DNA from: Octopus bimaculoides
Lineage: Eukaryota
Reading direction: 5' to 3'
Length of the DNA: 64,000 bases
NCBI RefSeq assembly: GCF_001194135.2
Contig: NC_068998.1
Coordinates: forward strand, 40,672,487 to 40,736,486
Shown one piece after another: positions 1 to 55,390 of this stretch. Made by a program: the position numbers and the translations under genes. The notes below the pieces were generated by a model that saw only the letters and a list, made by a program, of their open reading frames with translations, searched no databases and was not told the DNA's origin. Position 1 is the first letter of the stretch. Every line of letters starts with the position of its first letter.

Positions 1-1720
1 ATTTGCAACCATATGGTTTTTGGTTCAGACCCACTGTGTGGAACCTTGGGCAGCCCTGAGCCAGCCAATACTTTGTAAATGAATTCAGCAATGTTTGGTT
101 GACATAGGCTGTGTTACATCCGATTGAATCAAACACCATTGCGGTCTACGATGTACAAGGGCCTTACTGATGCTTTGAATGATGATGACGATTTTTGCAA
201 CATCAGCAGACAAATCATACTCTCTTCCACATTTGTTGATGGACCAAGGTATATGATGGAATATTGCCAAGATGCCAAGATGTACATACGGAAATACGGC
301 AGTGCTTTGTTCTTCATCACAATGACATGCCATCCAAACTGGCCTGAAATCTGGCAAAACCTATTCCTTAATCAGAAGCCGCATGACAGACCAGGTTTAA
401 TTGCCACAGTATATGACCTGAAGCAGGAAACTATTCATAAAGTATCTTACTGGAGTAGATGGCATATTTGGCAAGTATATTGCTTACGTGATCACTGTTG
501 AATATCAAAAGCAATGTCTTCCCCATGTACACTGTTTGCTATGGCTCAGTTTGTTCAAGCCTAAATACCAGATACAAACAAAGATCCAGAGGATCATCAG
601 TTGGTGCTGAAGCACATGATCCACGGTCCCAATTGCTCTAATAAGTCACCATGTTGGAAAGATGGAACGTGCTGTAAGTGGTACCATGAGCCTTTCAATG
701 AACATACATTGTGTGGAGAGGACTCTTATCCTGTGTACAGAGGACGGTCTCCAGGAATGGGAAGATTTGAAGGGCACCAAGAAGGTAGAAAAAGCCGAAA
801 TGTAACTTCAGAATGGGCGGTTCCCTACAATATACAACTGTTAAAACTGTTCAACTGCCACCTAAACGTAGAAATATGCTCTTCCGTGAAATCGATCAGA
901 TACATTATCAAATATACCATGAAGGGCAGTGATCAGGCAATGTTTAGAGTGAACAGAGAAGATGTGATAACACAGTATTTAACTGGAAGATACATCGGCC
1001 CTTCAGAAGATGTTGCCTCAGTACTCGGATTTCCGATTCATGAGAAGGAACCAGCTGTAGTTCACCTTCAAGTTTGTTTACCTGAGGAAAATCAAATCTT
1101 CTTTCAGGACAGTGCTGCTGTTACAGTAAACAATAACATGCGTAGGGCAACTCTCACTGAGTTAATGGATCTCTGTGCTCGCGATCCGTTTGCAAAAACT
1201 TTGTATTTTGCCGATGTGCCAAGGTTTTACACTTGGAATAAACAAGACATGGGAAAGGAGGAAGGTAGGGAAAAGAGGTGACCAGCATCCAGGGATTTTT
1301 GAGGTGAACTTTTTAGGTCAAGTATATACTGTTTCTTCTTGAATTGGTGAACTGTATTACTTAAGACTCCTTCTGCATTATGTCAAAGGACCAGTATTGT
1401 TCCACTCTTTGAAAATGTGTGATGGACAACTATTGCCATTATTCAAAGACGTCTGCAGAGAGAAAGGTTTGCTTCAGTCAGGTGATCATTGGCAGCAGAC
1501 TCTGGAAGATGCTGAGCAAACACAGCTTTCCAAAGCCATGAGAGATCTATTCATTGTGTCTCCTCACAAATACAGAAATTAACGATTCCAGTGCTTTATG
1601 GGCTCGATTTAGGAATTTGCTGTCTGAGGATTACCAGAAACATTAACCTTTTGATTAACGAGAGAAATTATGATCAATGTCTTCTGTGTTTTCAAGACAA
1701 ACTTAATGACCTGGGGCAGT
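1..1720 (+). mobile_element. Decayed Helitron RepHel fragment (Rep/HUH region only, frameshifted, no helicase visible)
   Basis: ORF 124-501 has STFVDGPRYM and FFITMTCHPNWPEI..DRPG. A shifted frame at 482-540 reads VEYQKQCLPHVHCLL (HUH motif at 524-532). ORF 601-1281 has MIHGP, VPYN..LL..FNCHLNVEIC and YIIKYTMKG. ~1345-1560 reads ELYYLRLLLHYVKGP..FKDVCREKGLL. All are Helitron Rep signatures. Confidence 0.92.
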
Positions 1721-12485: not shown

Positions 12486-12657
12486 TGTTTTAAATTTTCT
12501 TTTAAAATCTAGATGTAAATGTTGTATCTGTTTTGTTATATGAAATTATACCTCCCCACACTGATATAACTTTTTATATTTCTTTCTTTCAAACAGATAT
12601 TAACAATGGAATTGTTTTAAAGTTCATTTTGAACTTTAAACTGGCCAATTAACCCTG

Positions 12658-13279
12658 ATGAATGGTATTAGTTCAACTCTAGTTACCCAGTTGCCTCCAA
12701 TCCCCGCAGTTGGCGTGAATCCCAAGTTAACACCAAATCCGATTAGTCTAAGTACGGGCTTGAACAGTGAACAGGCTAGCTACCCAGTTTTGCATTTCCA
12801 GTCCCCATTAAAAACATCCCCACCGGAAGGAGGAGGAGAGCGAGATGGAAGAACGAGCGAACCAGTTTGTGAGAAACAGCAGATTGAAGTGCCAGCTTTG
12901 ATGTCAATGGACCAGTCCACTCGTAGAAGGATCCGTCATGTGCCGAAACATGAGCCGTTGAGCGAGAGTACCGCTATCACTACAACATCTACCACCACCA
13001 GTGCTACTATTGCTACAACTACTACTGCTACTGCTATTGTTAATAGTACGTCAGATGACAAGATGAAGGTTCCTGTTAAAGATCCTACTTCTAAAGTGGA
13101 AACAACCTCGAAGGAGAACCAGAGTGTTCAGAAAAAGACTGATCCGTTGTTGGAAAAGCATGAGAAACCAGCCAAGTGGTTTGTTGGCGACCTCATTTGG
13201 TCAAAAGTATCTGGTCATCCTTGGTGGCCCTGCCTTATTGCTTGTGATCCCGTTGAAGGGATCTATACCAAACTGTGTG
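12658..13279 (+). CDS. NSD2: NSD coding exon 1: N-terminus and first half of PWWP1
   Basis: Acceptor TTTCTTTCAAACAG ends at 12596. An in-frame TAA at 12637 precedes ATG 12658. Peptide [17 protein letters not shown]. Donor G|GTAAGA at 13280, phase 1. Confidence 0.93.
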
Positions 13280-14778
13280 GTAAGATATTGTCTTTTGTAT
13301 TTTATTAGACCAAATTGTTCTTTGTTTTATTTTCAAGTCTATAATTTCTTTCTAAATGACGTGTGTGTGTGTGTGCATGTGCAGGCTCAATGACGGCTGA
13401 GATTAAAAAGTTTGCTTTGTAACTACATGCCATGTCATGTAGTGAACCCACTACATGGCATGTTGGGAAAATATATTTTAATGTAGCTATATAGCTTTGG
13501 AGTGATAGATACATTGCAAGTCGGATTCGAGGTGGAAACTGTTTAGAAATTCATTCTAAGCACATGCACACCCATACATGTCTTTGTGGTGTGTGTGTGT
13601 GTGCTTATGTTTACATCAGTGTTTGTGTCAGTTTATGTTTTGTAACTTAGTGGGTTGATAAATAGTGTGGAGCTTAGGTGTTTCGCTCATAAACACATAC
13701 ACATCACCTGGTCTGAGATCTGAACCCCTGATCCCTTGACAGCGAGTCCGCTGCTCAGGCCATGTGCCTCCACAATAAACAGAATGGCTGAGGTAAATAA
13801 GATGATCTTGTTCGTTTATTTTTTTAGCATTGTTAAGAATGACAGTTTTAATAAGTTTAGTTAATTTTCTTCAACAACATGAAGAAGATGAAGCTATTTC
13901 TTTGACCCTTTTGATACAAGCTTACTGAGACAGCCTCTGGTTCTCTGGTACAAGCTTCCTCTTCAAAACTGATCTGAATTAAATTTTTCAATCAAAATTT
14001 CATGTTGATATATTTTCAAACATCAGTTATTTTAATATATTCTTCAGTATTTTGGAAGATAATTGAATCAAAGGCAGTGTTTTCCACAAAAATATGGTAA
14101 TGAAAGGATTAATGTCCATTTTTTGTGTGGTTCTAGAGTTAAATATTGAGCTAGATATGGTAATAATCCACCAGATAACATTTCTTTAACTAAAATCCAT
14201 TGCAGAAGTATTATTTAGTTTGAGTAATATATTTCAACATAAACCTTAGTTAACCCAGCTTGTTGGCAATAGGTACCAGGTAGTCTAAGAAATTTAATTC
14301 AGACTAGTATTGTCTTCAGAGATGTGTGTGAGTTATTTCTCTCATTTGCTGAATACTGCCCAGCAAGGGCTGGTATGTTACGAGGCAGTCAGCCTGGTTG
14401 AATGCATTGCTCTTCAGGCCACTGGATATAGCTGGACATTTTGTACCAGGAATAAAGTAGGAAAATTTCTTAGTCAGGAGGTGAACTTGCATTGCAGATT
14501 CTGTGTTTAGAGAGGAAGCTTCTGTGGTTGCTTGATCTGCTAGAAATAACAGCCAAATCTTCACTGAAATCACACCTGGTGTTTTGATAAAAGAAAATAT
14601 ATTGGGATAATGTAGCCCTAAATTTTTTATATCTGGGGGGAAAAGACTGGTTGATCACAACTGGAATCTTTAATCAAACAATCAGTTTGATATCAAGGTT
14701 GACCTAGAGCTAAACAATAAAAGCTTTTAAATATCAAGAAATAGAAAATCACAAATCGTCTATTTACTATTTAAATTA

Positions 14779-15973
14779 TTGGGTTGGCAAGTGAGTAATT
14801 TCGGATTTTTAGTGTGAAATGAAAGTAATTTTTTTCATACAAAGAATGAACTTCAACCAGTTATATATTTTCCATTTTGTGCTTGTAGGACTTCTGGTCC
14901 TTATCAGCCCAAAACTGAAGCAAGTGCAATTTCAGGTCATCATCATTATTGAAAGTTTTACCATTCAATGAATTTTGAAAACTTTGAAATAAATGGTAAT
15001 CTGATGGTGCAAGGTCAGGGCTATATGGGGGATGTGACATCACTCCCCAACCAAGCTCCAATCATTTTCACGAGTTAGCAAAGACGTGTGGTCTAGTTTT
15101 GTTATGGTGGAACACGATTCCTTTATGATTTGTCAATTCTGGTTGTTTTTCTTTGATTGATTCTTCCAGTTTCGTTAGTTGTTGATATGAAACATCTGGA
15201 TTTATCATTTGGTTCCTTGGAGGCAGCTCAAAATACAAAACACCTTTATAATCCCACCAAATTGACAGACAGCATGACCTTTTTTTTTATGCAATTCAAC
15301 TTTGTGTGTTTTGTGCTGGTTCATTACGCTTTTCAATTGATTTTATTGTGGACAATCCATTTTTCATCACCAGTGATGATTCATAAAAAAAAAAAAAGGC
15401 TGATTTCATTGCATTTGACATGCATATAGCAAATTTTGATTTGTTGTGTCAAGTGAATCTCTTTCAATTTATGTGGAACCCAAATATTGAGCTTCTTAAC
15501 GAGTCGAAGACATTCTAAGTGATTTTCAATTGTTGCGTGTGATAAATTTAACCTCTCTGCAATCTCCTGCACAATTATATGACAATCAGATTCAATTATG
15601 GTTTTGATTTGGTCATCATCAATTTCAGTAGGTTGACCAGAATGTTGGTCATCTTTGAGTGAAAAATCGCCGGAACAGAATTTTAAAAACCATTTCTGAC
15701 ATATGCGTTCTGTGAAGCAATCAACACCACAAACTTCACATTTCTCTTTGTGAACCTCAGCAGCCTTCTTGCTTTTACGGGAATAAAAAAGCAAAATATG
15801 CACTCTATGTTAAAATTGACACTGAATTAACAGCTGTAAAGAAAATTGTGTGCAATTTGCTTCTTAAAGTAAGCTAAAAGTAACGGCTATCAAATGTCAA
15901 AAGGAAAAAGTAATTTTAAAAATTTGTAACTCTGTTTACAAAAAAATACAAAATTACTTTCTTACTAACCTAA
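14779..15973 (-). mobile_element. Near full-length decayed mariner (DD34D-type) transposon
   Basis: TA-flanked imperfect TIRs TTGGGTTGGCAAGTGAGTAATTT / AAATTACTTTCTTACTAACCTAA. Minus-strand motifs: HTH region, WVPHKL, ITGDEKW, YSPDLAPSDYHLF. The second catalytic D is mutated (HHNKTRPH) and there are frameshifts. Confidence 0.95.
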
Positions 15974-16036: not shown

Positions 16037-16265
16037 CAGTGGTTCTCAACCATTTATTGTTCGATTCCTGTTTGATTCCTATTTTACTCTACTGGATCTC
16101 CATAGTTTTTGCTGAATATAATGAACATCTTACTGTATTTTTATAATTAAATATTAGTAGGAATTGTATTAAAAGAAACTTTTTATGTACTTTAGAAATG
16201 TTACCAATTTATTGGAGATAATTTTAAGAATAAAATCTTATGTGGACCCCTGTTGAGAACCACTG
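16037..16265. mobile_element. hAT-type MITE copy
   Basis: Perfect TIRs CAGTGGTTCTCAA / TTGAGAACCACTG; degenerate 8-bp flanks ATCTAAAA / GTTTAAAG. Confidence 0.85.
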
Positions 16266-16532
16266 GTTTAAAGCAAGTACTGAGGCCAACTCCTGAGACA
16301 TGGAAATTTACAGACCATAGCTTTTTATTTATTTTTGTACATATTGGGCTTTGTACCTTCTTGTCAAAAGAAATATTGTATTGTCAAGATAATCTTTCTT
16401 CCTCTTCCTGTGTATCTCACCATCTATCTGTGTATTGTGTATGTATCTGGTCTAACAATCTGTTTATTTGTCTATCAATCTTCCTACTCACTCGTTTATT
16501 TATGTATTTTTACTTTTATTTTTCACTTGCAG

Positions 16533-17399
16533 TAAAAGGCAAAGGATGTGTGCGGAATTACCATGTGCAGTATTTTTATGATGAACCAGAGCGGGCATGG
16601 GTGAGTGAGAATGCAACACTTGGATTTGAAGGGAAAGACAAATTCTTCAAATATGTAGAAGATATGCTAGAAAGGGCACCTGCTAAACAGCGATCCCAGA
16701 TTTCACAGAAATATGGAGTCAGCAAACACAAGCGCCCAGTTTGGGACCGTGCTGTTCGTTCAGCAGAAGTAGCACTGCCTTTATCCCACTCTGAACGGAA
16801 ACTCTGCTACATAAACAACTTTGACAAACATCCTGAAAAGAAGAAGCAAGAGTCTCCGGAAAAGTTGGCAGTTGAGGTTAGCAAACCAGACAAAGCTGGT
16901 CCCAAAGCCAAGAAACAAAAGACTGAGAGTTCTAGTGGAGCTGGTGTTACTAGCGGAGGAGATGGTGGTGGTAAAGTGAAAATAGAGTCTTCTTCTGCCA
17001 GTAAATTACCAAGTATTGTCAATGGAACTCTTGCTAAGAAACGCCACGCGTCACCTGGTAGCTTCGCCAATGACTCTGACAGCATTGCATCACCGCAGCG
17101 GAAAAGGCCAAAAGCGGCCGGCGGTACTGAGTCAGGTGGTGGGGCTGCCGGTGGCAGTGGGTGTGTGACTACTCCGAAATCAGGGAAAGATGATGGTTCT
17201 TTTGATATGTTCTGTCAGAAGCATAGGGAGGGTGTTCTGTCTGAGCACTCGGACTTTGACGAGCAAATGGTAGTTGAATATCTCAGGCAACAATGGAGTA
17301 TGATGAGCCAGAAGCAGAGAGCTCGTTACAAGTCTAAGTTTGGTGGTGGTGGTGGTGGAGGAGGAGGAGGTGTCATTACAAGCAGAGGTACATCATCAG
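16533..17399 (+). CDS. NSD2: NSD coding exon 2: second half of PWWP1, basic linker, HMG box, poly-Gly
   Basis: Acceptor TTTTCACTTGCAG, phase 1. Peptides RNYHVQYFYDEPERAW and FDMFCQKHREGVLSEH..LRQQWSMMSQKQRARYKSK (NSD2-type HMG). Donor CAG|GTAAAT at 17400, phase 1; alternative GT at 17388. Confidence 0.95.
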
Positions 17400-20300
17400 G
17401 TAAATGAATTTTAACTGTTTTAATTGAAGCAGTTGAAAACTGACCTGAGCAGAAGCAAAAGCTGTAATTTTTTCACAAAAACAAAGAAAGAAAAATTATT
17501 AATTATAATAATAATAATAATTATAATTATAATAACAATAATAATTATACACTGAAAAAAGAGCGGGTTTAAAGCATAAACATTCTTTAAATATTGACAA
17601 TTGGAAGAAAAGGAAAAATATTTTTTTTTTAAATTGAAATTAAATTAATATTTTTACTATTCTCTTATTATATTCTTCCCATGATTACCTCATTTTGTAA
17701 AAAAAATTATATTTATCTTAAGTGATAACCATAAATATTTCAGAAATTATACAAAAGTAACTACTAATTTTCATTACTTAGATTGATTAGGTTCATTAGT
17801 CCTTTATGAAAGAGTATGTATATATATATGTACACATGCATATATATTATATAGATGAATATTGAGTATAATTGTGATGATAGCAATAGTAATGATAATA
17901 TAATAATAATAATAATAATAATTCAAACGGGTCCCATGATGTAGTAGATACATTAATTTATTTTTAAAAAAGAAAACATGAAAAAGTGCTTTACTTTTTT
18001 TAAAAATACTTAAATTTAAAAAAAAATATTATTTAAAGATTTTTTACCCATTTTTTTTCCTCCCCGAAACATTAAACATTTTCATTGTTTTTCTTTCAAT
18101 TTTTATTTATTTATTTATTTTAATATTTAAAAAAAGACAAGGAAAGAAAAAAAAAATTTCTGTCTCTCACTCACTTTTCCTCCCCTGACATAGAAAAATC
18201 ATTTGAAAGTGGTGTTGAGAGTGTTTAAAACTGGAGAAGACAGCCTGATTTTGAGCGGACTAAGTTGCCTTTTGAAGTTATACACACTGCAGGCTGTTCC
18301 AGAGGTGAATGGAATCAAATTAACAAGAAACATATTAAAACATTACATGTGAAGCAGGTCCATTTTTTTTTTCATCCTTATCACTTGGATGGTTGAATCC
18401 TATACACAAAAACATGCATGCATAATTTTTTAACAGAAGGTGGGAAATGAGGGACAAAACACACACAGACACACACTCACACTATTTTCAAACAGTTAAA
18501 GGGGTTATCTCTTTTATATATATATGTATATATATATATTTTATTGTCTCTTATATATTGTATATTTAAAATATATTTATGGTCATGTTTCTGATATGAC
18601 TGACTGACCAAGCATATTTCAAATTCACCCTACCTCTTGAAGATTAAAATGAAGAAAAAAAATTAAGATTTAAGACAAAAGAATTTAATTTTTCTCTTTG
18701 TTTTACTAATTTAATTTTTATTTATTTACTGATTTAAAAAATGAAAACACAAAAACCTCAACCTCCCTTCCAATTCATACAGTATTATTCATAAATTTAT
18801 GATATTGCCTTAACATCCATTAAGAAAAAAAAAAATTGGCATTAAAAAAAAACCCCCTAAAAATTTGATGGATAAATACAATCATATTTTATGAAAAATG
18901 TTTTATAAGAAATTATTCTTACATTTTTTTGTCTTGTGGCAAATGATTTAACGTTATTTATTATTTTTTTGGACTTCTCCCTCAACTTATTTGGATGTAA
19001 ATATAGGGATAGCATTTTTAGTTGTCACTTTATATTATAAGTATGGACACATAACACAAACACTTGACTATTTCTTACTCTTGTAATAATGGGAAATTTA
19101 GTAATGTTGCCAGAAAAGAAAATAACGAAAAGCAAAAAAAAAGGGGGGGAAGTTATAAGGCTGAGTGTTGTTTTTTTTTTAATGATATATATGTATATTA
19201 TTAACCAACATACCCTCCACTGACTCCTCTCACCCACCACCTTCATTTCTGGAATAGCCCTGCTTTGTGGTCAATCATCATGGATTCCATGGTTGTTTGA
19301 ATTAAAAAAAAAAACAATAAAAAATATATATATGTATGTATATTCTATTATATGTATATGTATATATAGCTTTGTAATAATAATATCATAATGTTGTATT
19401 TTACATTCACCTCGTAAAGTTCATGTACTCCTAGGAAAATAAACAGTAGTCTTTACCAAAATGGTGATGCTACTGAGCTACACTTCTGGAAATTTTGGTA
19501 TTTTTTTTCTCATTTTGGTGTAAAGTGTGCATATATCTGTGAATGTATGGACTTTGGCATGGTGTTTAGTCTATCTGTCCCCTTAAAATCTTCAGCTGAA
19601 TCTCCAAATTTTAAACACAATTGACAGCATCTGTTTTTCAAATGTCAAGTAATAATAAGAAAAATTATTATATTAATAATGACAAAAAGGGGAAAAAAAT
19701 GACAGATCTTAAAGTAATAATAATAGTTTATGTTTTCAATTCTTTTATTTTCTAGTTATTTCTTTAAATAATAATGTTAACAGTGAAAATTTGTTAAGTT
19801 TCAAGATTATGCCTTTAGTAAACGTTAATCCACTAAAAATCATCTTAGGGTTAATGAAAACATTATATAAATAATAAAAATTTATATATAAATTTAAATT
19901 AAAATGTTACCCATAGATTAAAATTTAAACTAAGTTATTTGAAAAGAGGTGTATTTTTCATGTGAAGTTTCAAAAGAAAAAAGATAGATATTAATTTTCA
20001 GTATTGATTGAAAAAAAAAAAAGCCAAAACTAAATCAGTTAGTGGGTAAGTTAAAATGTTTTTTTTTTTAGTATCTCTGAAATATACTTGAAATGTTTTT
20101 CCTTTATTGAATTCCAAATTTTGAAAGAATCTGATATTTCATTATATCAATTTCTGATATGAAAGAAACGGGGGAACAAAGAAGAAAAAAAAAATAACAG
20201 CTTTTGCTAACTTAAGCTACAGGAAAATTTTTCAGTTGTGTGATTTTTGAAGAATTTTTTTTGTTTTTCTTAGAAAAAAAAAAAAAGAAACTGTTAGTAA

Positions 20301-23300
20301 AATTATGCTTTTCTTCATATATAGCATGTACACTTGCACACTGACAAACAAACAAAACAAAACAAATACACATTCACACAAACGAGCCTTAAGGGCCAAA
20401 ATTTCACTTAAAGAATTCTCTCTCTCTCTCTCTCTTTCTCTGACTTGTTTTGATATTCACTATTCAAAAAAAAAAAAATTATTTCACAAAAAAGAATTAT
20501 TTCTCCTAAAGTTTTTAAATTCTTATACCATCATACAATTCTCCCTAGTAAGAATAAAATTTCTGAAATGGATCGAGAAATTTGGGAATTGCTTTGGAAT
20601 GGCCTGTCATGTTTACAAATGTAGGTTCCATGCCCCACAGGCAACCTTTAACTTTTTCTATCTAAGGGTTTTTTTTTTCATTTCAGTATTTGCACTCTCT
20701 CATTTGTAGCATTCTTTATTTTGAGATCAAGTATTCCCCAAAATAATTGTGTATATGTTTAGCATACATTAGAATCTTCATCGATGTTTTCATAAAACAG
20801 ATATCTAGAATTGAAGCAAAAGAATTTTTTTTTTTTTTTACACCACAAAATCTAATTCCTGCAAACACTAATTGAAAATATTTTAGGTTAAAAAAAACAA
20901 AACCACTATATATGTACAGTTTTTGTTTTTATTTAAATTTTTTTTCAATAGTTGAAGATATCTGGTCTTTTCATAATTTAATCAATATCTGTATTTTTGT
21001 TTTTAAAGTTAAGTGTGATTATCCTTTTATATATATATCATTTGTTTTAATGTCCACTTTTCTGCACTTAAATAAGTGAGGCAGATTTTCTACATCTGGA
21101 TGCTAAACTTTACATGTAAGGTATTTTCCCAAACTCAGACATGTTTTCATGGAAGATTGGAAATGGACACTGCTTGTATACCAGTGACACTCATTTACAA
21201 CTATCATGTGATGTCAAGGCAAGGAGACAGTAATACAGACATACATGGGTATATACACATATGTACTATGAGCTTATTTCACTTTCCATTTATCAGATCC
21301 ATTCACAAGGCCTAGGGCTATAGAAAACGATACTTGCCCAAGATGCCATGCAGTGAGACTGAATTCAGAACGATGTAGTTGGGAAGCAAATTTCTTACCA
21401 CACAACCACCCTTTAGTGTGTGAGTGTGTAAAGGTTTGTTACTTAGTTCTTAAGGTGTTGCACTTGTGATCTTAAGATGTGGTGTGTTCTTGAGCAAAGT
21501 TCAAATCCCAACTAAAGGCAACATTGCTTTTCATTTTCTGAGGCTGATAATTAAGTATTGGATTGATATAATCGACTGTCCTCTCCTACACTAAAAATTG
21601 TGGCCTTGTACCATAATTTCTATTTATGGTTACAAATAATCATCATTATTTTTGAGTGAGAGAGCAATGTATGCCATCAAAGTAATGCTGGGGTACAAAT
21701 AGATGAAGCCCAGTATACCCATCATGACTACCCGTCTGATAAGGGTACACAGGTACATGCATTGTAACCATATGTGTGTGACATGGTGACTGTGCATGAA
21801 CCTGCAGGTGGTGCTGGTTAGAATTTTCTTCAGGTCAAGTAGCCTATCCTGCTCAAAAGGTCCCTAGATAAGAATTGTTTAAAGACGATGAACAAAATAC
21901 TCACATTTTCAGTGGTGAATTCTTCAGACCCCAAAGAATTCCACTCAAGACATGGCTATGCTGCTACTCTACTCCTGCTTGCGATCAGAGATGCACATAT
22001 CGTCAGCCACCAAGGGACATGCTCAAGTGGTTAAAATCAAGCAAGTCTGCGATAGTGAGCAGAGTATATGTTGCATCCATCTTTTATAAAATATGTACAT
22101 AACACTTCCAATCAGTTAAGATGAGAAGCCATGAGAGAATTTAGTAAAATAATATTTGTCATCATTAAACTGATATTTGAAGCATAAATTAATATGAAAT
22201 TTTGGTGGAAAGTTTTAGTTTAGATCACCTTGAAACTGGAAGTTTGTATTGTGGAACTCGTGCGATCTGTGGTGGGTTGGTTTTAAATGGGTTAAGATGG
22301 AATACTGGAATACTGACAGAAATGGTTGACTGAGGACTAAATGCCTTACAGTATTTAGTTTCTATTCTATGATGCACTGACTTCAAATCTTATTAGGATT
22401 TGTAAAATAAGATTTAACATGTTGGTGTGGCTCTATGGTTTAGAAGCTTATTTCTCAACTATGTGGTTGTAGGTTCAGTTCCACTGCACAACACCTGGAG
22501 AAAGTGTTTTCTATAGTCACAGGCTGAGCAAGTCCTTGAAAGTGGATACATGTATGAGTATATATGTATAAAACAATACAAATGTGCATTGTGACCAGCA
22601 ATATGTCACATCTAATAGCTTGGACAGTTGCTTAATAACCCCCCCCNNNNNNNNNNNNNNNNNNNNNNAATGTATGTGTTGATGTGCCTCATGTACCCTT
22701 GTGTTGATATGGTTGTAAATGAGCATCACCATCGTACAAGCAATGTTGTTTGTTTCTAGTTGTTTGTGAAAAAACATGTCTGGCTATGGAGGAAATATTA
22801 CCCTGCTTGGAAACAAGTGAGGGCTGGCAACAAAAAGGGCATCTGACTGTAGAAAGATTTGCCACAGTAAATTCTGTCTGATCCATACTAGCATGAAGAA
22901 GTGAATGTTAAATGATGCTGATGTCATGACACTGAAGAATTAGGTCTTTCAGTTCGTTTGTAATATTTCTGGCCCTAGTTCTTGCCTTTTCATATCTTCC
23001 TTTCATCGTAGTCGTGGTCTTGTAAGGTAAACAAGATTGTCTTTATGTAATAGACGATAAAAACTTTGTGAGGTGAGTACCATTGTCTTATTTTTAGTCA
23101 ATACTTGTTATTTTAGAAAATAGCACTTTCCAAATGCCAACCACTACTGAATTCTGAAAACAAAGTGGTATGTATACTTTAAATAAACAGTTAGTTAATC
23201 TGTTAAGCCGGGTGGGGGAGGGGGGGGGGTTGTCAAAACTTGTTTCACTTTGTGGACCAGATTGAAGTAGAAAGTAAATCTTTATTGGTTGAATAAGGAC

Positions 23301-29474: not shown

Positions 29475-30720
29475 CACCGAACTGCAAAAGAAACGCAAGA
29501 TGTGTGACTGGGAAATATGTTTTAATTTCATTTTGTCAGAGATAAATTTTGATAAATCTGATAAAGTCAATTTCTTGGATGCACTTTGACCACAGTCTAT
29601 GTATGGGTTGTTGTCGTGTGTTCTGGTAGTGGGTGGATTCAGCACATTGAGATTGTAGGGCGTGACATGTTCAATACTGTGTATGCCCTCCCTGGTTGTT
29701 CAAAACAGCCATAAACCACCAGTACATGGAGTGCATGAGGCGGTTCACAAAAGCCATTGGCACCTGTGCTCACACTATGAGGAAAGCTGCCTCCAGTTCC
29801 ACACAAGTTGTCAGCCTTGGGACCACCTGGTTCAGCCGTCTCTGGATTTCATTCCACATGTGTTCAATTGGGTTCAGATCCAGGCTGAGAGCCAGCCATG
29901 GCATGGTTCTGATGTAGTGCTGATGCAGGAAGTCCATGGTGACCCTGGCCATGTTGGAGGGAGCATTGTCCTGCTGGAACATGTGGCTATGGTGACACAC
30001 AAAGAAGGGCACGATGTGAGGTCTTAAGATCTGGTCAATGTAGTGCTGTGCTGTGATGCCATTCCCTCTGCCTGTACCAACATTTTGGAACACATGGGGC
30101 TCAATTCTCTGATTCAGGCCTGTAGCACCCCAAGCCATGATGCTTTGGCCACCCCATGCGTCTCTCTCCACGACACATGCATCTCTGTAGTGTTCACCCC
30201 TCCTATGCCACACCCTCACTTTGAGGTGGAAATAGTACTGGCTCTTGTCAGAGAAGACTATCAACTTCCATTGTTGATGCTACTAATGTCGGTGCTGTGT
30301 AACCCACTGTAGCTATGCCTGACAGTGGCGGGCAGTGAAGACAGGCCCTCGAGCAGGACGATGGCAACGTAATCAGCTGATAGCTTGTTCTCTCTGCGCT
30401 ACTGACAATCAGGTCATACCTGATGCATTCAAATTATGAATGGTGAGAATGCGGTTCAGTTTGATTTTTATACCCATAACCTCCACGAGATGCATGTGCA
30501 TTTCGGTTTTCACGACAATTGTTTGTGACTGCCACCCATGGCATTCAACACAGCTATGTTTTGGCATTTCATTTCAGGGGAAGTCAAAAGGTTACCTGCA
30601 ATATGGGTCTCAGCCATAAACCTGCATGTCTTGGAATATTTACACTTAAAATAAATTTTCAGAATTTATCATATAAAATGACATTTGAAAAAATCGTGTT
30701 TCTTTTGTGTAGATTACTGA
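29475..30720 (-). mobile_element. Decayed Tc1-family (DD34E) transposon
   Basis: ORF 29770-30264 has FSD, WGGQSIMAWG, FQQDNA and DLNPIEHMW, with exactly 34 residues between D and E. A TIR-like TA-CACCGAACTGCAAAAGAAACGCAA lies at 29475. The opposite end is only weakly matched (~30700), so the bounds are uncertain. Confidence 0.85.
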
Positions 30721-36572: not shown

Positions 36573-36817
36573 AAGAACCGGAAGTGAAATTAGAACCCAT
36601 CAATGTAGATATAATTAATTTTAAAAAAGGGAGTACCGTGAAGAAACCTACCTCTCACCCCAGCAGACCTGCACTGAAGAAAAGTGAATCTGATGAACAG
36701 ACTCCATCAAAAAACGAGGTGAAACTAAAGCGTTCACCTCGCATCAGTAAACCTTCAATCAAAAAACTGGAGGCTGAAGAGGACAACAAGCTCTTCACGG
36801 AATACCAAAAGCAAATG
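36573..36817 (+). CDS. NSD2: NSD coding exon 3: Lys/Ser/Glu-rich linker
   Basis: Acceptor TTTCTTTTCTCCCTAG, phase 1 (matches exon 2). Open frame EEPEVKLEP..EYQKQM. Donor ATG|GTAAGT, phase 0. Confidence 0.85.
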
Positions 36818-39199
36818 GTAAGTAAAGTATTCACCAACCTCTAAACATTATACATGCACATGCGTACACACACAGATTTAAAACTGTTTAATCTGTAAAT
36901 GTTTGTTAATAGAATCTGTAATGCATGTCTCTATGTGTATTGCTTGCATTGTTTCTTCTGTTAGGTGTAACATCCTCAACTTCGTCTGCCGAGCTTCTTT
37001 CTATATCTGCCTTTTTTTGGTACACAGCAACTGTCTTTCACCATCAGCTCTTCAAGTCTTCCATGGCGTACCTTTATCACAGATACTTTTCATCAACTCT
37101 CAACTCTTTGTGTTTTCTTACCTTTCTGCCTTCTGCTACTGCCTCTGCATCACTGTTTCACTTATCTTACCCTTCAACACCTCAACATAGTCATCACTCT
37201 TCTACATATATTTCTGGATGCAGTCTTAGAATCACTGATAAATTCAGGAATTGATTAGATTTACAGCTTAGAGGACATGACTATTCAAAATTACACAAAA
37301 ACTGTTAACTTAACACATATTATTCCCATCTCATCTCCTCTTCTTTTGCCTACTTATTCCTGGGTGGGTTGTGGGGACACAATCCTCAAGCATGGGCAGT
37401 CAGAGAATGAGTTGCAGGTGACGGATAGCGATGGCCACCAGATATGATGGTTAGTTGTAAGATAAACAGGTTCCTGCCAGACAAATAGCAACCCCTGATC
37501 AAACAGCAGTAATCTACTAGGGGAGATGGAGCAATGGGTAACTCTTTTAGCTCTCAAGAAAACTATCGTACTATCAGCAATGTAGTTATGATGGGGTGAG
37601 GAAAGATTGCTTCAAAAAGCCTAGATTTTATGGGGTCTGAGAAAATTATCAAATTGGTGACTGGCGTGAATAAGACCCAAAAACTGCAGTTTGGTTACAT
37701 TAATTATTTGGTTTCAAAATTTTCCTTGCACCAAATAATGAATGTCTAAATGAGGTTAACAGTTTTTCTGTATTTTTGAATGGCTAATATGTATCTTCCA
37801 CATATAGTTTCAATCTCAGATCAAATCCCTTGCCAGACAGGGATTAATTACATCTATTTGTCTGGGAAAAATTCTAAATTTCTGTTCTAATTCCAGTCAA
37901 CTTACTATTTTTTTTTAAAGCTTCATCTGGTATTAAATTATGGTGAATTATTGTATGGTATGGCTAGTTGCCTCCTCATCTTTCTTGTATAAGATTAAGT
38001 TATTCCTTAACCCTTTAGCATTTAAAAGCATTAAATATTGGGATCCGATATGACCCTAATATTCTACTTGTTTTATGTTCAAACTGGCATCTCATATCTA
38101 CCCTACAATGTTATTCTGAAAATAAACAACCACATCATTGAAATCTCAAAGGATTAATTCAAAACAATGTGAATAATAAAAAGCATTGCATTTGACAGAG
38201 TAATCTGAATACTAAAGTTAAATCCTGTTCTGTAATTTCTAGTCTTCTTTTGGATAGATTGTTAGAGAGAGAGAGAGAGAGCGTATTGAGTTAGAGGAGT
38301 ATCATTGAATATCAGTGATTCAATGCTCCTGGAACTTTCACTTTAATACATACAACAAGTTTGATTGCGACAGTAGTGTTTCTGTATGATGGTTTCTGTT
38401 TTATCACTCTTTATTATCACGAGTCTTTGTGGATAAGAAATTTGCTTCACAACCTCATGGCTTTGGCATGTGTAGAGGTGTGTGAAGGCTTACATTCTGT
38501 GTTTGTGTGAATAATAACTTGAGTTACGTTCAGTATTGTCTGGCAATGCCCTGTAAGTAAATCACCATAGAACCCTGTGCTTTCAAAGATGAGTGAAATG
38601 AAAATTCCCTTATTTGGAAAACAAGTTCAAGACAGTAAAGTCATCTACCTGAAAAACAATATGAACACTATGTATTCCCTAACCCCTGCTAGAATGGGTT
38701 TAAAAAAGAAAAAGAAAAAAGAAAGTGAAATAAATGCCACAAACACACACACATGGACATAAGACAATAGAGAGCAGAAACAAATACCAACTTGATAAAC
38801 GATTCTGCTTACCCATTGCTCTCTACCTTATTAATATTCATTAATTAATGATTTATTTTTGTTGTCTCCTATATAGTTGTATTGATTGATAATTTAGCAT
38901 CGCATTTTGTATTTTCATTGTATTCTTCCTTTGAATTAGATACCAAATTGCACCATCTCCACTCCACTCCACTCCACTTCTACAATATAACCTAAAAGTG
39001 TAGGCATCTCAATAGTCAATATGTTTGATTGTTAGTCTTCTCTGGAAAATTCGGTTAAGAAATTGGAACCTCAAGAAATTGGTAAATTTGGTTTTTAAAC
39101 CCTTTAGCATTCAATGCTTATATATTCATAGTGGTTTGAATTAATTGTAGTTTTGAGATTTCAATGGTGCGTTATTGGTATTATTGTTTATATGGAGGT

Positions 39200-39748
39200 G
39201 ATAAGTGACTGAGACTTTTGGTGATTTGCTGTGCTTGAGAAGACACGTCAAGCTAAGTGAAATCATGGTTGTGGCTAGTGCCTGTGACATGTGAAAGGCA
39301 CCTGTGCCAGTGACATGCAAAAGGCACCCGTGCTGGTGACAAGTAAATGGTACCCGTGCTGGTGACAAGTAAATGGTACCCGTGCTGGTGACAAGTAAAT
39401 GGTACCCGTGCTGGTGACAAGTAAATGGTACCCGTGCTGGTGACAAGTAAATGGTACCCGTGCTGGTGACAAGTAAATGGTACCCGTGCTGGTGACAAGT
39501 AAATGGTACCCGTGCTGGTGACAAGTAAATGGTACCCGTGCTGGTGACACGTAAATGGTACCCGTGCTGGTGACACGTAAATGGTACCTGTGCTGGTGAT
39601 ATGTAAAAGACATCCACTACACTCTATGTAGTGGTTGGCATTAAGAAGGGCATCCAGCTGTAGAAACCAAACCAAAACAGACTGAGGCCTGGTATTCCAG
39701 TCAAAATGCCAGCATGGAAAACGAATACTAAATGACGATAATAATAAT
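39200..39748 (+). mobile_element. RTE LINE 3' end inserted into a family-1 MITE (halves at ~39096-39200 and 39749-39802)
   Basis: Contains CTTGAGAAGACACGTCAAGCTAAGTGA (RTE ORF end, shared with 42290 and 62570) and the tail ATGCCAGCATGGAAAACG..GATAAT. The MITE termini lie on both sides. Confidence 0.75.
39278..39615 (+). repeat. 26-bp minisatellite, 13 units (10 near-identical), unit GTGCTGGTGACAAGTAAATGGTACCC
   Basis: Unit starts at 39278, 39304, 39330 ... 39590; period 26 counted directly. Confidence 0.97.
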
Positions 39749-47351: not shown

Positions 47352-48084
47352 CTCTCTTTCTCTCTCTGTGAAAGTATCTGTCACTACAGTATCGAAATGT
47401 GATTGTTTCAGTTAGTGGAATAGTTTCATTTTTAAAGTGAAAGTATTTGACATGAGTGTTTTTGTTTCACTTTTGACACGTAATACTTAAATAGTGGAGG
47501 AGATATTATGTTGCCGTGTGCTCGAACTCTGCAAGAAGTTAATAATTTTTTTTGACTAAAACACAACTGGAACCCTAAGTAAGGCATGTGTAAAATTTGA
47601 ATGAAATTGGTTGCGTAGTTCTCGAATTTTAGGGATTCACACAGACAGACAGACAGACAGACAGACACACATTCTCATTTTTATATATATAGATATATAT
47701 ATATATATATATGTATATATTGATATATATATATGTATATATTGATATATATTCATCATCATCATCGTCGTCGTTTAATGTCCACTTTCCATGCTAGCAA
47801 GGGTTGGACGATTTGACTGAAGACTGGTGAAACCAGATGGCTACACCTGGCTCCAATCTGATTTGGCAGAGTTTCTACAGCTGGATGCCCTTCCTAACGC
47901 CAACCACTCCAAGAGTGTAGTGGGTGCTTTTACGTGCCACCGGCACGAAGGCCAGTCAGGCTGTACTGGCAACGGCCACGCTCAAAATGGTGTATTGTAC
48001 GTGCCACCTGCACAGGAGTCAGTTCGGCGGCGCTGGCAACGATCTTCCTCGAATGTCTTTACACGTGCCATCTGGCATGTGCTG

Positions 48085-50545
48085 AGAGACCTTGCTGCAT
48101 GCAATCAAGCCCTATGCATAGCACTTGTGGAAACTTACTTCAGCCCTGATATAGAGGATGCAGAAGTACACGTACCAAAATATGTCATACTGCGAACAGA
48201 CAGAAGGGAAAGGAGCCATGGTGGAGTTGCTGTATACATCCGTGACGACCTCACACCCCAGGTCTTACTGTCATACTCAAATTTGGTATGTGACACTCTA
48301 ATTGTATACATAAGACAACATAATATAGTCATATGCAATACATATTGCCCACCGGATGCTCCAAACCACATAGGCAAACTTGAAGATTGCTTCACTAGAA
48401 TTAAGGAAATCCTCATGAAACTGGAACACCACGTGACTATATTTCTTATGGGTGATTTCAACTTCCCCAACGTCAAATGGCCCGAAGGTCTCATACTCTC
48501 AGGAATGACTTATCGCAAGCAAGCACAGGTGGAATGCCTGCTCAACCTCACCAATGCCCTATTCATGGAGCAAGCTGTTCTCAGACCAACTAGAGCGAAT
48601 AACATTCTGGATCTCTACTTCACGAACAATATGGACATCATTCATGATGTGAAAGTGACGCCGACATTAGTCCCAGAGCACAAGGCCAAAACNNNNNNNN
48701 NNNNNNNNNNNNNNNNNNNNNNNNNNNNNNNNNNNNNNNNNNNNNNNNNNNNNNNNNNNNNNNNNNNNNNNNNNNNNNNNNNNNNNNNNNNNNNNNNNNN
48801 NNNNNNNNNNNNNNNNNNNNNNNNNNNNNNNNNNNNNNNNNNNNNNNNNNNNNNNNNNNNNNNNNNNNNNNNNNNNNNNNNNNNNNNNNNNNNNNNNNNN
48901 NNNNNNNNNNNNNNNNNNNNNNNNNNNNNNNNNNNNNNNNNNNNNNNNNNNNNNNNNNNNNNNNNNNNNNNNNNNNNNNNNNNNNNNNNNNNNNNNNNNN
49001 NNNNNNNNNNNNNNNNNNNNNNNNNNNNNNNNNNNNNNNNNNNNNNNNNNNNNNNNNNNNNNNNNNNNNNNNNNNNNNNNNNNNNNNNNNNNNNNNNNNN
49101 NNNNNNNNNNNNNNNNNNNNNNNNNNNNNNNNNNNNNNNNNNNNNNNNNNNNNNNNNNNNNNNNNNNNNNNNNNNNNNNNNNNNNNNNNNNNNNNNNNNN
49201 NNNNNNNNNNNNNNNNNNNNNNNNNNNNNNNNNNNNNNNNNNNNNNNNNNNNNNNNNNNNNNNNNNNNNNNNNNNNNNNNNNNNNNNNNNNNNNNNNNNN
49301 NNNNNNNNNNNNNNNNNNNNNNNNNNNNNNNNNNNNNNNNNNNNNNNNNNNNNNNNNNNNNNNNNNNNNNNNNNNNNNNNNNNNNNNNNNNNNNNNNNNN
49401 NNNNNNNNNNNNNNNNNNNNNNNNNNNNNNNNNNNNNNNNNNNNNNNNNNNNNNNNNNNNNNNNNNNNNNNNNNNNNNNNNNNNNNNNNNNNNNNNNNNN
49501 NNNNNNNNNNNNNNNNNNNNNNNNNNNNNNNNNNNNNNNNNNNNNNNNNNNNNNNNNNNNNNNNNNNNNNNNNNNNNNNNNNNNNNNNNNNNNNNNNNNN
49601 NNNNNNNNNNNNNNNNNNNNNNNNNNATAGGCTTATCTCTCTGACTTCACACATCAGCAAAGTCATAGAAAGGATAGTCAGAGGAAAACTAATCGCATTC
49701 CTTGAAGAAAATAACTTGCTGAGTGATACCCAACATGGCTTTCGACCAGGTAGGAGCTGCCTGACCCAGCTCTTACAACATTATGACTGGGTGTTGAGGC
49801 AGTTACTCAACAACTCAAATGTGGACGTAATATACCTTGATTTTGCAAAAGCTTTTGACAAAGTGGATCATGGTGTGATATGCCACAAACTGCGTGATCT
49901 TGGCATAGCTGGAAAACTTGGAGAGTGGTTACATGACTTTCTGAAAGATAGAAGTCAGGCAGTAATGGCTATGAAAACACAAATAGTCAGCGGTGTTCGA
50001 CAAGGTACTGTCTTGGGACCATTGCTTTTTATAGTTGCCCTCAAGTGCCCGGATAGCCACCCTTGTAAGCTATGCAGACGATACGAAAGTCTCGCAGAAA
50101 ATACAGAACTCCAGTGATGTTGCACATCTGCAGCAGGAGTTGGACTCAATTTACAGATGGGCTGAGGATAATAATATGCAGTTTAATGCTGAAAAATTCC
50201 AAGCCCTGTACTACCAACGTCCAAAACTGAATATGAAACTTACAGAGTACACTGGTCGGCAGGGAATTTCAATCCCAGAGCCATGATACCTCTTTCCAAG
50301 TGCACATTACCAGGATGGCGACAAAGTGCAGACGACTGGCTGGCTGGATCCTGAGAACATTCAGAACCAGAGATAAGGAAACCATGATAGCAATCCAGAG
50401 AAGATTCACAAAGAAGATTGTCTCTTTGCAACTGCTGAACTACTGGAGAGAAGGTGGGAGAGGTATGCAGTAATATACATCTGGAAGATCCTGGAAGGAA
50501 TTGTGCCAAATTTTGGCATTGAAAGCTACACCAATGTCAGAACGG
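48085..50545 (+). mobile_element. CR1-like non-LTR retrotransposon ORF2 (APE endonuclease + RT), gapped and frameshifted
   Basis: EN motifs ETY, GGVAVYI, GDFNFP and PTR..NILDL precede the gap. RT motifs ISLTSHISKVIER, QHGFRPGRSC, YLDFAKAFDKVDH, GVRQGTVLGPLLF and YADD (50071-50082) follow it. The gap size fits a single element. Confidence 0.93.
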
Positions 50546-52288: not shown

Positions 52289-52668
52289 ATGAACAACAGC
52301 AGCAGCAAGAGCATTGATGGTCACGGCAAGAGTGCAGAATTCAGGCATGCTTCTTCTCACCAGAGAGGCCAGCTAATTCCAAAAGTGGAGCTGGACAGAG
52401 ACGGTGTGAAATTACTTGTAAAACAGGAGGAGAATAACGAGGAAGAGGGGCATGAGGAGGAGGATGAGGAAGAAGAAGAAGAGGAGGAAGAGGAGGAAGA
52501 AGAAGAAGAAGAAGAAGAGGAGGAAGAGGAGGATGATGAATATGAGTTGGAGATCTTCAAACTGTCTTCCAGTTGGCCTGTGAAGAGAGAGAACGTGTGC
52601 CAAATCTGCGAAAAACCTGGCGACCTTACTGACTGCGAAGGACCATGTTTGGGTTCTTATCACTTGCA
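52289..52668 (+). CDS. NSD2: NSD coding exon 6 (3' end lost in gap): acidic tract and PHD1 start
   Basis: Acceptor CCTTTACCATTTTAG, phase 0. Peptide [26 protein letters not shown] matches NSD PHD1. Confidence 0.93.
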
Positions 52669-53249
52669 NNNNNNNNNNNNNNNNNNNNNNNNNNNNNNNN
52701 NNNNNNNNNNNNNNNNNNNNNNNNNNNNNNNNNNNNNNNNNNNNNNNNNNNNNNNNNNNNNNNNNNNNNNNNNNNNNNNNNNNNNNNNNNNNNNNNNNNN
52801 NNNNNNNNNNNNNNNNNNNNNNNNNNNNNNNNNNNNNNNNNNNNNNNNNNNNNNNNNNNNNNNNNNNNNNNNNNNNNNNNNNNNNNNNNNNNNNNNNNNN
52901 NNNNNNNNNNNNNNNNNNNNNNNNNNNNNNNNNNNNNNNNNNNNNNNNNNNNNNNNNNNNNNNNNNNNNNNNNNNNNNNNNNNNNNNNNNNNNNNNNNNN
53001 NNNNNNNNNNNNNNNNNNNNNNNNNNNNNNNNNNNNNNNNNNNNNNNNNNNNNNNNNNNNNNNNNNNNNNNNNNNNNNNNNNNNNNNNNNNNNNNNNNNN
53101 NNNNNNNNNNNNNNNNNNNNNNNNNNNNNNNNNNNNNNNNNNNNNNNNNNNNNNNNNGATCCGAGCTCATCAAAGCCTTGTGAATGGATTTGATTGATGG
53201 AAATTGAGAAGCTTGTATGTATGTATGTATGTATGTATGTATGTATGTA

Positions 53250-53309
<60 letters not shown>

Positions 53310-54747: not shown

Positions 54748-54778
<31 letters not shown>

Positions 54779-54805
54779 GCGATTTTTTTTTCTTTTATTT
54801 TTTAG

Positions 54806-55009
54806 ATTCACACCGTTGTTTCTGTTGTAAACAGACAGGAGATGTGAAGAAGTGTTCGGTGGTCCAATGTGGCAGGTTTTATCACGACGTATGTGTGAGA
54901 AAGCATCCTCTCACACGGGCTGAAAGCAAATCATTCACTTGCCCTCTACACGTCTGTGTAACTTGTTCCGCCGACAGTAATAGTTCTAAAAATCCTAAAG
55001 CATCTAAAG
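54806..55009 (+). CDS. NSD2: NSD exon 7: PHD2
   Basis: [44 protein letters not shown]; AG/GTAAGT; phase 1/1. Confidence 0.97.

Positions 55010-55356: not shown

Positions 55357-55390
<34 letters not shown>

What the first reader, a model, noticed from the sequence alone, without database searches (positions are those of the whole stretch)
17399..21070. Predicted SET-less short NSD isoform (PWWP+HMG, 498 aa) by intronic polyadenylation
Seen: reading through the exon-2 donor gives GGT AAA TGA (stop 17405-17407). The next ~3.7 kb contain no copy I can recognise of the SINE/MITE/LINE families that elsewhere recur every few hundred bp to ~1 kb. The stretch is very AU-rich, with AATAAA at 19316, 19438, 19873 and 20553. 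The 19438 signal has upstream TGTA elements, a CA ~14 nt downstream and a U-rich tract after it. The donor (GTAAAT) opens the longest intron (~19 kb). Known: vertebrate NSD2 and NSD3 make SET-less short isoforms (MMSET-I, NSD3-short) ending after PWWP1(/HMG). Inference: this is a composite terminal exon with a long 3'UTR, so a non-catalytic adaptor isoform may be ancestral or convergent in molluscs.
Basis: partly seen in the sequence, partly recalled or inferred. Interest (0 to 1): 0.82.

Follow-up and report, generated by a model that had tools for sequence, protein, structure and literature searches.

The report
Unproven short NSD isoform in octopus intron
Just after the exon that completes the PWWP and HMG-like part of a mollusc NSD histone-methyltransferase gene lies an unusual 3.7 kb AT-rich, repeat-free stretch, but nothing in the sequence shows it is the tail of a short enzyme-less isoform rather than ordinary intron.

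Summary
Exon 2 (16533-17399) ends CAG|GTAAAT. Read-through gives GGT AAA TGA (stop 17405-17407) and a 498-aa PWWP plus HMG-like product. The four AATAAA are where stated. 17408-21070 has 25% GC, is the only long low-GC block in the window, and lies in its longest stretch without intra-window repeats.

- A quick in-frame stop follows every donor I checked, so the stop carries no information.
- AATAAA is depleted, not enriched: 4 seen against about 11 expected, and none in the first 1.9 kb.
- The donor matches the U1 consensus at 8 of 9 positions. Composite terminal exons typically have weak donors.
- A related octopod keeps the stop and the first 514 nt, but at about the neutral rate.
- No transcript data for this species could be reached.

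Only the repeat-free block favours a 3'UTR.

A side result supports the principle. Sea-cucumber RNA-seq contigs show a spliced, SET-less NSD transcript that runs through a donor into a 19-kb intron. That intron lies just before PHD1, which corresponds to octopus intron 3, not intron 2.

My estimates are about 0.28 for a real intron-2 short isoform and about 0.5 for ordinary spliced-out intron.

The parts
12658..13279 (+). NSD coding exon 1: start codon, disordered N-terminus and the first half of the PWWP domain. Donor GTG|GTAAGA, phase 1.
   Evidence: tblastn with P0004. The N-terminus MNG...LP.IP resembles the mollusc-like homologue P0004. There is an in-frame TAA upstream at 12637-12639.
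16533..17399 (+). NSD coding exon 2: second half of PWWP, a linker and the HMG-like box. It ends 21 residues after ...ARYKSKF.
   Evidence: The same exon limits are seen in L001/L002, L007 and L008.
17400..17407 (+). 5' splice site GTAAAT, followed by the read-through stop TGA at 17405-17407.
   Evidence: The donor matches 8 of 9 positions of CAG|GTAAGT. The site is identical in the related octopod contigs L001/L002.
17408..21070 (+). AT-rich (GC 0.253) block with no intra-window repeat. This is the proposed 3'UTR; I read it as the 5' part of intron 2.
   Evidence: It contains only microsatellites and homopolymer runs. It has no Pfam-positive ORF and no Rfam match above threshold.
19438..19443 (+). 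AATAAA with the best-looking context: upstream TGTA, a CA 13-14 nt downstream and a T-rich tract 46-77 nt downstream. It would give a 3'UTR of about 2.05 kb.
   Evidence: The TGTA copies come from the 19324-19368 TA/TG microsatellite.
20553..20558 (+). AATAAA with a G/T-rich downstream stretch (G+T fraction 0.65). It would give a 3'UTR of about 3.15 kb.
19316..19321 (+). AATAAA directly after a genomic A11 run. This is an internal-priming hazard for oligo-dT data.
19873..19878 (+). AATAAA inside an AT-only low-complexity tandem repeat.
17454..17473 (.). Left arm of a 20-nt inverted repeat (19 of 20 complementary) whose partner is at 20189-20208.
   Evidence: pair I14. An equally good pair appeared in 1 of 200 Markov simulations. 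No target-site duplication is visible in the flanks read.
20189..20208 (.). Right arm of the same inverted repeat.
21136..21413 (.). First intra-window repeat (SINE-like) after the block. GC rises to 0.32-0.45 from here on.
36573..36817 (+). NSD coding exon 3, acceptor tag|AAGAACCG. It joins exon 2 in frame (...GTSS-EEPEVKLEP...). Its donor ATG|GTAAGT opens intron 3, which is the intron positioned like the one used for the short form in sea cucumbers and vertebrates.

Best explanation
17400-21070 is the 5' part of the 19.2-kb intron 2 of an NSD-type H3K36 methyltransferase gene, and it is normally removed by splicing from the strong donor CAG|GTAAAT to the acceptor at 36572/36573.

Its unusual look has a simple reading. 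It is old DNA not derived from transposable elements (TEs). It has drifted to the AT-rich, homopolymer- and microsatellite-laden composition seen in the few other short non-TE patches of the window. It has not been broken up by the SINE, MITE and transposase insertions that fill the rest of the intron.

The sense-strand shortage of AATAAA, with none for 1.9 kb after a near-consensus U1 site, is what an intron protected against premature cleavage and polyadenylation would look like. The GGT AAA TGA stop is an incidental consequence of reading into AT-rich intron.

Shown: the exon limits, the donor strength, the composition, the absence of repeats and the hexamer depletion. Inferred: that the block is spliced out in most transcripts, and that the hexamer depletion reflects selection.
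For: - Exons 2 and 3 join in frame and continue into the PHD and AWS exons.
- The donor matches U1 at 8 of 9 positions, the best of E1-E3. Composite-terminal-exon sites typically have weak donors (PMC3708835), and the transcript-supported read-through donor in sea cucumbers matches only 6 of 9.
- AATAAA: 4 against 11.0 expected, P = 0.01. The first copy is 1.9 kb in, P <= 0.005. Antisense TTTATT is at 13 against 10.5-13 expected.
- An in-frame stop follows within 2-15 codons of every donor examined.
- The octopus median 3'UTR is 350-380 nt (PMC9699675).
- Other short patches with GC 0.26-0.28 occur elsewhere in the window's non-coding DNA.
- Several GC-richer 'unique' intervals are single-copy TE remnants: DDE_3 at 29770-30264 and a Mos1 HTH at 15381-15803.
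- Identity to a related octopod downstream of the donor (93.7%) equals the four-fold-site identity (93.4%).
Against: - The repeat-free interval (4.9 kb including the exon) is the longest in the window, and the low-GC block begins exactly at the donor. This suggests long-term intolerance to insertions, as expected of a UTR or a regulatory block.
- The first 100 nt after the donor are 97 of 99 identical in the related species, above the neutral proxy.
- NSD genes of vertebrates, and as found here of sea cucumbers, do make SET-less forms from a large intron.
- No RNA data were available, so absence of the isoform is not shown.
Confidence: 0.5

Rival explanations
1. Exon 2 plus 17400 to about 19.46 kb or about 20.58 kb forms a composite terminal exon. 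In a fraction of transcripts cleavage and polyadenylation in intron 2 beats splicing. The result is an mRNA with a 2-3 kb AU-rich 3'UTR that encodes a 498-aa PWWP plus HMG-like protein without PHD or SET domains. It would be a non-catalytic chromatin reader or adaptor like MMSET I and NSD3-short.
For: - A TE-free, AT-rich 3.7 kb block starts at the donor, and it is the only such block in 64 kb.
- The intron is 19 kb, the largest in the window.
- The AATAAA at 19438 and 20553 have acceptable contexts.
- The first 100 nt after the donor are slightly over-conserved.
- SET-less short NSD isoforms exist in vertebrates (PMC12650565; the NCBI-annotated 632-aa Ochotona NSD2 isoform X2, P0002).
- Sea cucumbers have a spliced transcript that reads through a donor into a 19-kb intron, with a conserved tail.
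Against: - The hexamers are fewer than chance.
- The donor is strong (against the weak-donor rule in PMC3708835).
- The UTR would be 5-10 times the octopus median (PMC9699675).
- The end point lies 21 residues after the HMG-like box. That is not the position used in vertebrates and sea cucumbers (just before PHD1), which corresponds to octopus intron 3.
- The stop and its conservation carry no information.
- No transcript evidence was found, although the collections hold nothing from this species at this locus.
Confidence: 0.28
2. The block is a functional intronic element other than a UTR. It could be a splicing or elongation control region, or an enhancer or scaffold-attachment-type AT-rich region, kept free of insertions. 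It might use the long-range RNA pairing 17454-17473 / 20189-20208 to loop out 2.7 kb next to the donor.
For: - The block shows insertion intolerance and sits next to the donor.
- The first 100 nt are 98% conserved.
- The 20-nt inverted repeat (19 of 20 complementary) was matched in only 1 of 200 simulations.
Against: - There is no conservation beyond the neutral rate after the first 100 nt.
- There is no similarity to the equivalent intron of more distant molluscs.
- The Markov model understates homopolymer runs, so the significance of the inverted repeat is overstated.
- Nothing identifies a specific function.
Confidence: 0.15
3. The block is an unrecognised, decayed transposable element, or the 3'UTR of an antisense gene.
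For: - The inverted repeat at 17454-17473 / 20189-20208 could be terminal inverted repeats of a 2.75-kb non-autonomous element.
- Antisense TTTATT is not depleted, with 13 copies.
Against: - No target-site duplication flanks the arms (sequence).
- There is no second copy in the window.
- No ORF in the block has a Pfam hit.
- The minus-strand ORFs with Pfam hits near or inside intron 2 are TE-derived (DDE_3 inside intron 2; Mos1 HTH upstream of exon 2). No antisense host gene was found.
- The left arm and its flanks are colinear in the related octopod.
Confidence: 0.05

Closest known systems
MMSET I / NSD2-short (647 aa) and NSD3-short (645 aa) of vertebrates
   Same: All would be products of an NSD gene that keep the N-terminal PWWP (plus the HMG box in NSD2) and lack the SET domain. 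They are described as acting as non-catalytic adaptors (PMC12650565). An NCBI-annotated 632-aa NSD2 isoform with PWWP and HMG Pfam hits is in the database (P0002).
   Different: The vertebrate forms extend roughly 110-125 residues past the HMG box, to just before PHD1 (P0002 against P0021). The Ochotona short form ends in a 20-residue tail that does not begin like a read-through of GT, so it is probably a separate terminal exon; that is my inference. The octopus prediction ends 21 residues after the HMG-like box, one intron earlier, and has no transcript support.
Composite-terminal-exon intronic polyadenylation (IgM secreted form, CstF-77 intron 3)
   Same: The proposed mechanism is the same: a 5' splice site upstream of an intronic poly(A) site in a large intron, giving a C-terminally truncated protein (PMC3708835).
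   Different: Known cases typically combine a large intron with a weak 5' splice site. Here the donor matches 8 of 9 consensus positions, and canonical hexamers are depleted.
SET-less NSD transcript of sea cucumbers
   Same: It comes from an invertebrate NSD gene. Five introns are spliced out, and the transcript then runs through a donor (CTG|GTAAAG, 6 of 9) for at least 2.2 kb into a 19-kb intron. It encodes PWWP plus an HMG-like box only. The 22-24-residue read-through tail and its stop are kept in a second species at 71-76% nucleotide identity.
   Different: It ends about 30 residues before PHD1. That intron corresponds by position to octopus intron 3 (after 36817), not intron 2. The post-HMG intron homologous to octopus intron 2 is spliced out in that transcript. 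No poly(A) tail was seen at the contig end.

Membership tests
NSD-type H3K36 methyltransferase gene (N-terminal half) | N-terminal PWWP domain | tested here: met
   Pfam PWWP, E 3.2e-11, 44 bits against a cut-off of 25.6, residues 177-248. The domain is split by a phase-1 intron at the same place as in Holothuria and in L007.
NSD-type H3K36 methyltransferase gene (N-terminal half) | HMG box after PWWP (NSD2-like) | tested here: inconclusive
   Pfam HMG_box gives 19.9 bits, below the cut-off of 25.4. The segment FCQKHR...QKQRARYKSKF aligns with the HMG region of NSD2 homologues whose precomputed Pfam hits include PF00505.
NSD-type H3K36 methyltransferase gene (N-terminal half) | Downstream PHD fingers, second PWWP and AWS on the same strand | tested here: met
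   tblastn of P0004 hits 52553-63023 in the expected order.
NSD-type H3K36 methyltransferase gene (N-terminal half) | SET and post-SET domains | not testable with these tools
   The window ends within or after the AWS exon.
Composite-terminal-exon (intronic polyadenylation) isoform | Transcripts continuous from the exon across the 5' splice site | not testable with these tools
   No RNA-derived sequence of this or any octopus species was retrievable.
Composite-terminal-exon (intronic polyadenylation) isoform | Cleavage site with non-templated poly(A) | not testable with these tools
   As above.
Composite-terminal-exon (intronic polyadenylation) isoform | Poly(A) signal hexamers present beyond chance, with proper context | tested here: not met
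   AATAAA is at 4 against 11 expected (P = 0.01) and ATTAAA at 8 against 11. The contexts at 19438 and 20553 are acceptable but not distinctive.
Composite-terminal-exon (intronic polyadenylation) isoform | Large intron | tested here: met
   19,173 nt.
Composite-terminal-exon (intronic polyadenylation) isoform | Weak 5' splice site (typical, not obligatory) | tested here: not met
   CAG|GTAAAT matches 8 of 9 positions, against 6 of 9 for E1, 7 of 9 for E3 and 6 of 9 for the sea-cucumber read-through donor.
SET-less NSD short isoform (MMSET I / NSD3S type) | Ends at the position used by known short forms (just before PHD1) | tested here: not met
   The predicted end is 21 residues after the HMG-like box. 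Known and newly found short forms end one or more exons later.
Transposable element | Further copies, terminal repeats with a target-site duplication, or a TE protein | tested here: not met
   There is no second copy in the window. One inverted-repeat pair exists but has no target-site duplication. No Pfam hit was found. A genome-wide copy number could not be tested.

The most novel reading that the evidence does not exclude
The octopus NSD gene regularly produces, by cleavage and polyadenylation in the first 2-3.7 kb of intron 2, a 498-aa PWWP plus HMG-like reader without PHD or SET domains. Together with the sea-cucumber read-through transcript found here and the vertebrate MMSET I and NSD3S forms, this would mean that a non-catalytic NSD adaptor made from the big intron behind the N-terminal module is either ancient in bilaterians or repeatedly reinvented at different introns.
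Probability: 0.28. Interest if true: 0.55.

Novelty: new member of a known kind. Interest (0 to 1): 0.3.

Why it matters
The short forms of NSD2 and NSD3 have methyltransferase-independent, adaptor-type functions and are studied as cancer drivers. Whether such forms predate vertebrates is not known from the papers I read.

A mollusc short form would show that splitting NSD into a reader-only product and a reader-plus-writer product is a general feature of the gene. It would also give a comparative handle on which N-terminal parts matter.

As it stands the octopus case is only a hypothesis.

Tried and rejected
1. Transcript-derived proteins. Three word-index searches used the 498-aa product, a low-complexity-masked exon 1-2-3 query, and concatenated ORFs of the block. 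They gave only one octopod hit, P0001, whose contigs carry the upstream intron and are therefore genomic. The masked query also lost the distant homologues, so X-masking weakened that search.

2. Exact look-ups. Look-ups of the window ORFs 16253-17407, 20305-20709 and 12658-13308, and of a GTG-start version of exon 2, found nothing on record. The spliced 498-aa sequence was not accepted by the tool.

3. P0016. This 483-aa N-terminus-to-HMG product first looked like a short-isoform transcript. Its contig L004 has an acceptor-like ttttcag just before the start-codon exon and no PWWP intron, so it is most simply genomic DNA from a lineage with exons 1 and 2 fused. I rejected it as evidence.

4. 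Distant mollusc-like contigs. L007 and L008 share only coding similarity with the window. No conserved non-coding block is present.

5. Other searches. An exact 30-mer from the conserved post-donor stretch gave 0 hits in JGI metagenomes. Rfam gave nothing above threshold (mir-297-like, 25 bits against 90, E 0.44). Searches for SRR11869394 and for 'octopus' plus 'NSD2' in the literature found nothing useful.

6. Low GC as a UTR signature. In Holothuria the transcribed read-through region is only slightly lower in GC than the rest of its intron, so this check was not informative.
Full report
**What is in the window.** The + strand carries the N-terminal half of an NSD-type histone methyltransferase gene.
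- Exon 1 runs from the ATG at 12658 to 13279 (donor GTG|GTAAGA, phase 1).
- Exon 2 is 16533-17399 (donor CAG|GTAAAT, phase 1).
- Exon 3 is 36573-36817.
- PHD, second-PWWP and AWS exons follow between about 52.3 and 63.0 kb.

The exon 1 plus exon 2 product has a solid PWWP hit and a sub-threshold HMG-box hit. The HMG-like segment is plainly homologous to the HMG segment of NSD2 relatives. The nearest database sequence is a 92-93% identical exon-2 ORF on genomic contigs from two sequencing runs (P0001, L001/L002).

**Check of the observation.** All stated facts are correct.
- Reading through the exon-2 donor gives GGT AAA TGA, with the stop at 17405-17407, and a 498-aa product ending GTSSGK.
- AATAAA occurs at 19316, 19438, 19873 and 20553.
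- Intron 2 is 19,173 nt.
- Self-comparison of the window shows 16243-21135 to be the longest interval without any intra-window repeat, 4,893 nt against 2,939 nt for the next.
- 17408-21070 has GC 0.253. All 36 other repeat-free intervals of at least 400 nt have GC 0.32-0.45, and no other low-GC block exceeds 700 nt.
- The block holds only microsatellites and many A and T runs. It has no Pfam-positive ORF and no Rfam match above threshold.

**What is and is not more than chance.**
- The stop is uninformative. Read-through of the E1, E2 and E3 donors stops after 9, 2 and 8 codons. The homologous exon end in other mollusc-like genomic contigs stops after 3 codons (L004) and 15 codons (L007).
- The hexamers are not enriched. 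From composition 11.0 +/- 3.3 AATAAA are expected and 4 are seen (P = 0.01). None occurs in the first 1.9 kb (P <= 0.005). Antisense TTTATT is at 13, within expectation.
- The upstream TGTA elements at the 19438 site come from a TA/TG microsatellite.
- The AT-rich, repeat-free block is a real and locally unique feature, and it starts at the donor.

**Related sequence.** L001 and L002 are genomic, because they carry the upstream polypyrimidine tract and AG. They cover 16400-17913.
- Identity is 94.8% in the exon, 93.4% at four-fold sites and 90.9% at third positions.
- Identity is 93.7% over the 514 nt after the donor, with many microsatellite indels. Only the first 100 nt (97 of 99) are above the neutral proxy.
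- The upstream intron becomes unalignable 133 nt before the exon.
- GGT AAA TGA is conserved. At about 7% divergence, and overlapping the splice site, that is expected either way.
- More distant mollusc-like contigs (L004, L007, L008) keep the exon limits but share no non-coding similarity.

- The intron is large, which fits.
- The donor matches 8 of 9 positions of the U1-complementary consensus, the best of the first three donors. That does not fit.
- The octopus median 3'UTR is 350-380 nt (PMC9699675). The first AATAAA would give about 1.9-2.05 kb.
- A strong U1 site followed by a hexamer-poor zone is at least as compatible with protection of a long intron from premature cleavage as with a long UTR.

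**Precedent in the family.** MMSET I (647 aa) and NSD3S (645 aa) lack the SET domain and act as adaptors (PMC12650565).
- The RNA-seq contig L003 is 99.4% identical to the Holothuria leucospilota NSD2 locus (L006). Five introns are removed.
- It then runs colinear through the donor CTG|GTAAAG for at least 2.2 kb into a 19-kb intron, the largest of that gene.
- Its 841-aa product (P0003) leaves the 1770-aa long form (P0006) at residue 820, about 30 residues before PHD1.
- A second holothurian contig (L005, 71-76% nucleotide identity) has the same read-through, with a conserved tail ending ...VTGSG*.
- This shows that SET-less NSD transcripts made by donor read-through exist outside vertebrates.
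- In that transcript the post-HMG intron homologous to octopus intron 2 is spliced out. The terminal intron corresponds by position to octopus intron 3. If the short form is ancestral, the place to look in octopus is after 36817. A form ending after exon 2 would be lineage-specific.

**Limits.** No transcript-derived protein or contig from this or any octopus species could be retrieved, and exact look-ups of four window ORFs found nothing. The lack of RNA support is therefore uninformative, not negative.

**Rivals considered.**
- An unrecognised TE is unlikely. There is no second copy, no TE protein and no target-site duplication around the one notable inverted repeat, 17454-17473 / 20189-20208 (19 of 20 complementary, matched in 1 of 200 simulations).
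- An antisense gene is unsupported. The minus-strand ORFs with Pfam hits near or inside intron 2 are TE-derived, and no antisense host gene was found.
- A non-UTR regulatory role for the block cannot be excluded.

**Verdict.** The interpretation remains an untested hypothesis whose cited sequence signals (stop, hexamers, conservation) carry little or no weight. Its best support, the insertion-free AT-rich block at the donor of a 19-kb intron, is suggestive only.

| Reading | Probability |
|---|---|
| Ordinary spliced-out intron | about 0.5 |
| Real intron-2 short isoform | about 0.28 |
| Other intronic function | about 0.15 |
| TE or antisense gene | about 0.05 |

If true, it would be a new member of a known kind (a SET-less NSD isoform made by intronic polyadenylation) and of moderate interest.

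Noticed in passing
L003 1-4949; L006 2912-13831; L005 2519-2801: Sea-cucumber (Holothuria leucospilota and a second holothurian) RNA-seq contigs show an NSD transcript with five introns spliced out. It reads through the donor CTG|GTAAAG for at least 2.2 kb into a 19-kb intron. It encodes an 841-aa PWWP plus HMG-like, SET-less product whose 22-24-residue tail and stop are conserved between the two species. It ends about 30 residues before PHD1, as the vertebrate short NSD2 and NSD3 forms do.
   Followed up: partly
window 17454-17473 and 20189-20208: A 20-nt inverted repeat (19 of 20 complementary) lies 55 nt and 2.79 kb after the exon-2 donor. An equally good pair arose in only 1 of 200 Markov simulations. 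It has no target-site duplication. It could be long-range RNA pairing or chance aided by A and T runs.
   Followed up: partly
window 17408-19315: The sense-strand AATAAA is absent for 1.9 kb after a near-consensus donor, although about 5.7 copies are expected. ATTAAA (6 copies) and antisense TTTATT are not depleted. This looks like a U1/PAS-type protection pattern.
   Followed up: partly
window 36818-38200: Intron 3 is about 15.5 kb and contains assembly gaps. It is positioned like the intron that hosts the short-form end in sea cucumbers and vertebrates. Read-through of the E3 donor gives VSKVFTNL*. The first ATTAAA is at 37932 and the first AATAAA at 38121. GC there is ordinary (0.32-0.41).
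   Followed up: partly
window 16038-16270: A MITE-like element with terminal inverted repeats (CAGTGGTTCTCAAC...GTTGAGAACCACTG) lies 260 nt upstream of exon 2. It is repeated elsewhere in the window. The related octopod contig has different sequence at this place.
   Followed up: no
window 15381-15803 (-) and 29770-30264 (-): These are single-copy transposase remnants: a Mos1-type HTH_48 (E 7e-11) and a DDE_3 (E 1e-5). They lie inside intervals that look 'unique' by self-comparison, so intra-window repeat mapping understates TE content.
   Followed up: partly
window 1-1300 (+), 47827-50286 (+): Long ORFs here, judged by eye, look like TE proteins. The one at the window start looks helitron- or helicase-like. 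The other looks like a LINE endonuclease/reverse transcriptase interrupted by N gaps. They were not searched.
   Followed up: no
window 39141-39675 (-): A tandem array of roughly 75-nt units gives overlapping ORFs with a repeated peptide (TSTGTIYLSPARVPFTCHQHGYHLLV) in intron 3. It is probably a satellite or the tandem part of a SINE.
   Followed up: no
L004 467-1929: In one lophotrochozoan-like lineage (an ENA metagenome contig) the NSD start-codon exon and the PWWP/HMG exon are fused, with no intron inside PWWP. The exon ends at the same post-HMG position, with read-through GKV*.
   Followed up: partly
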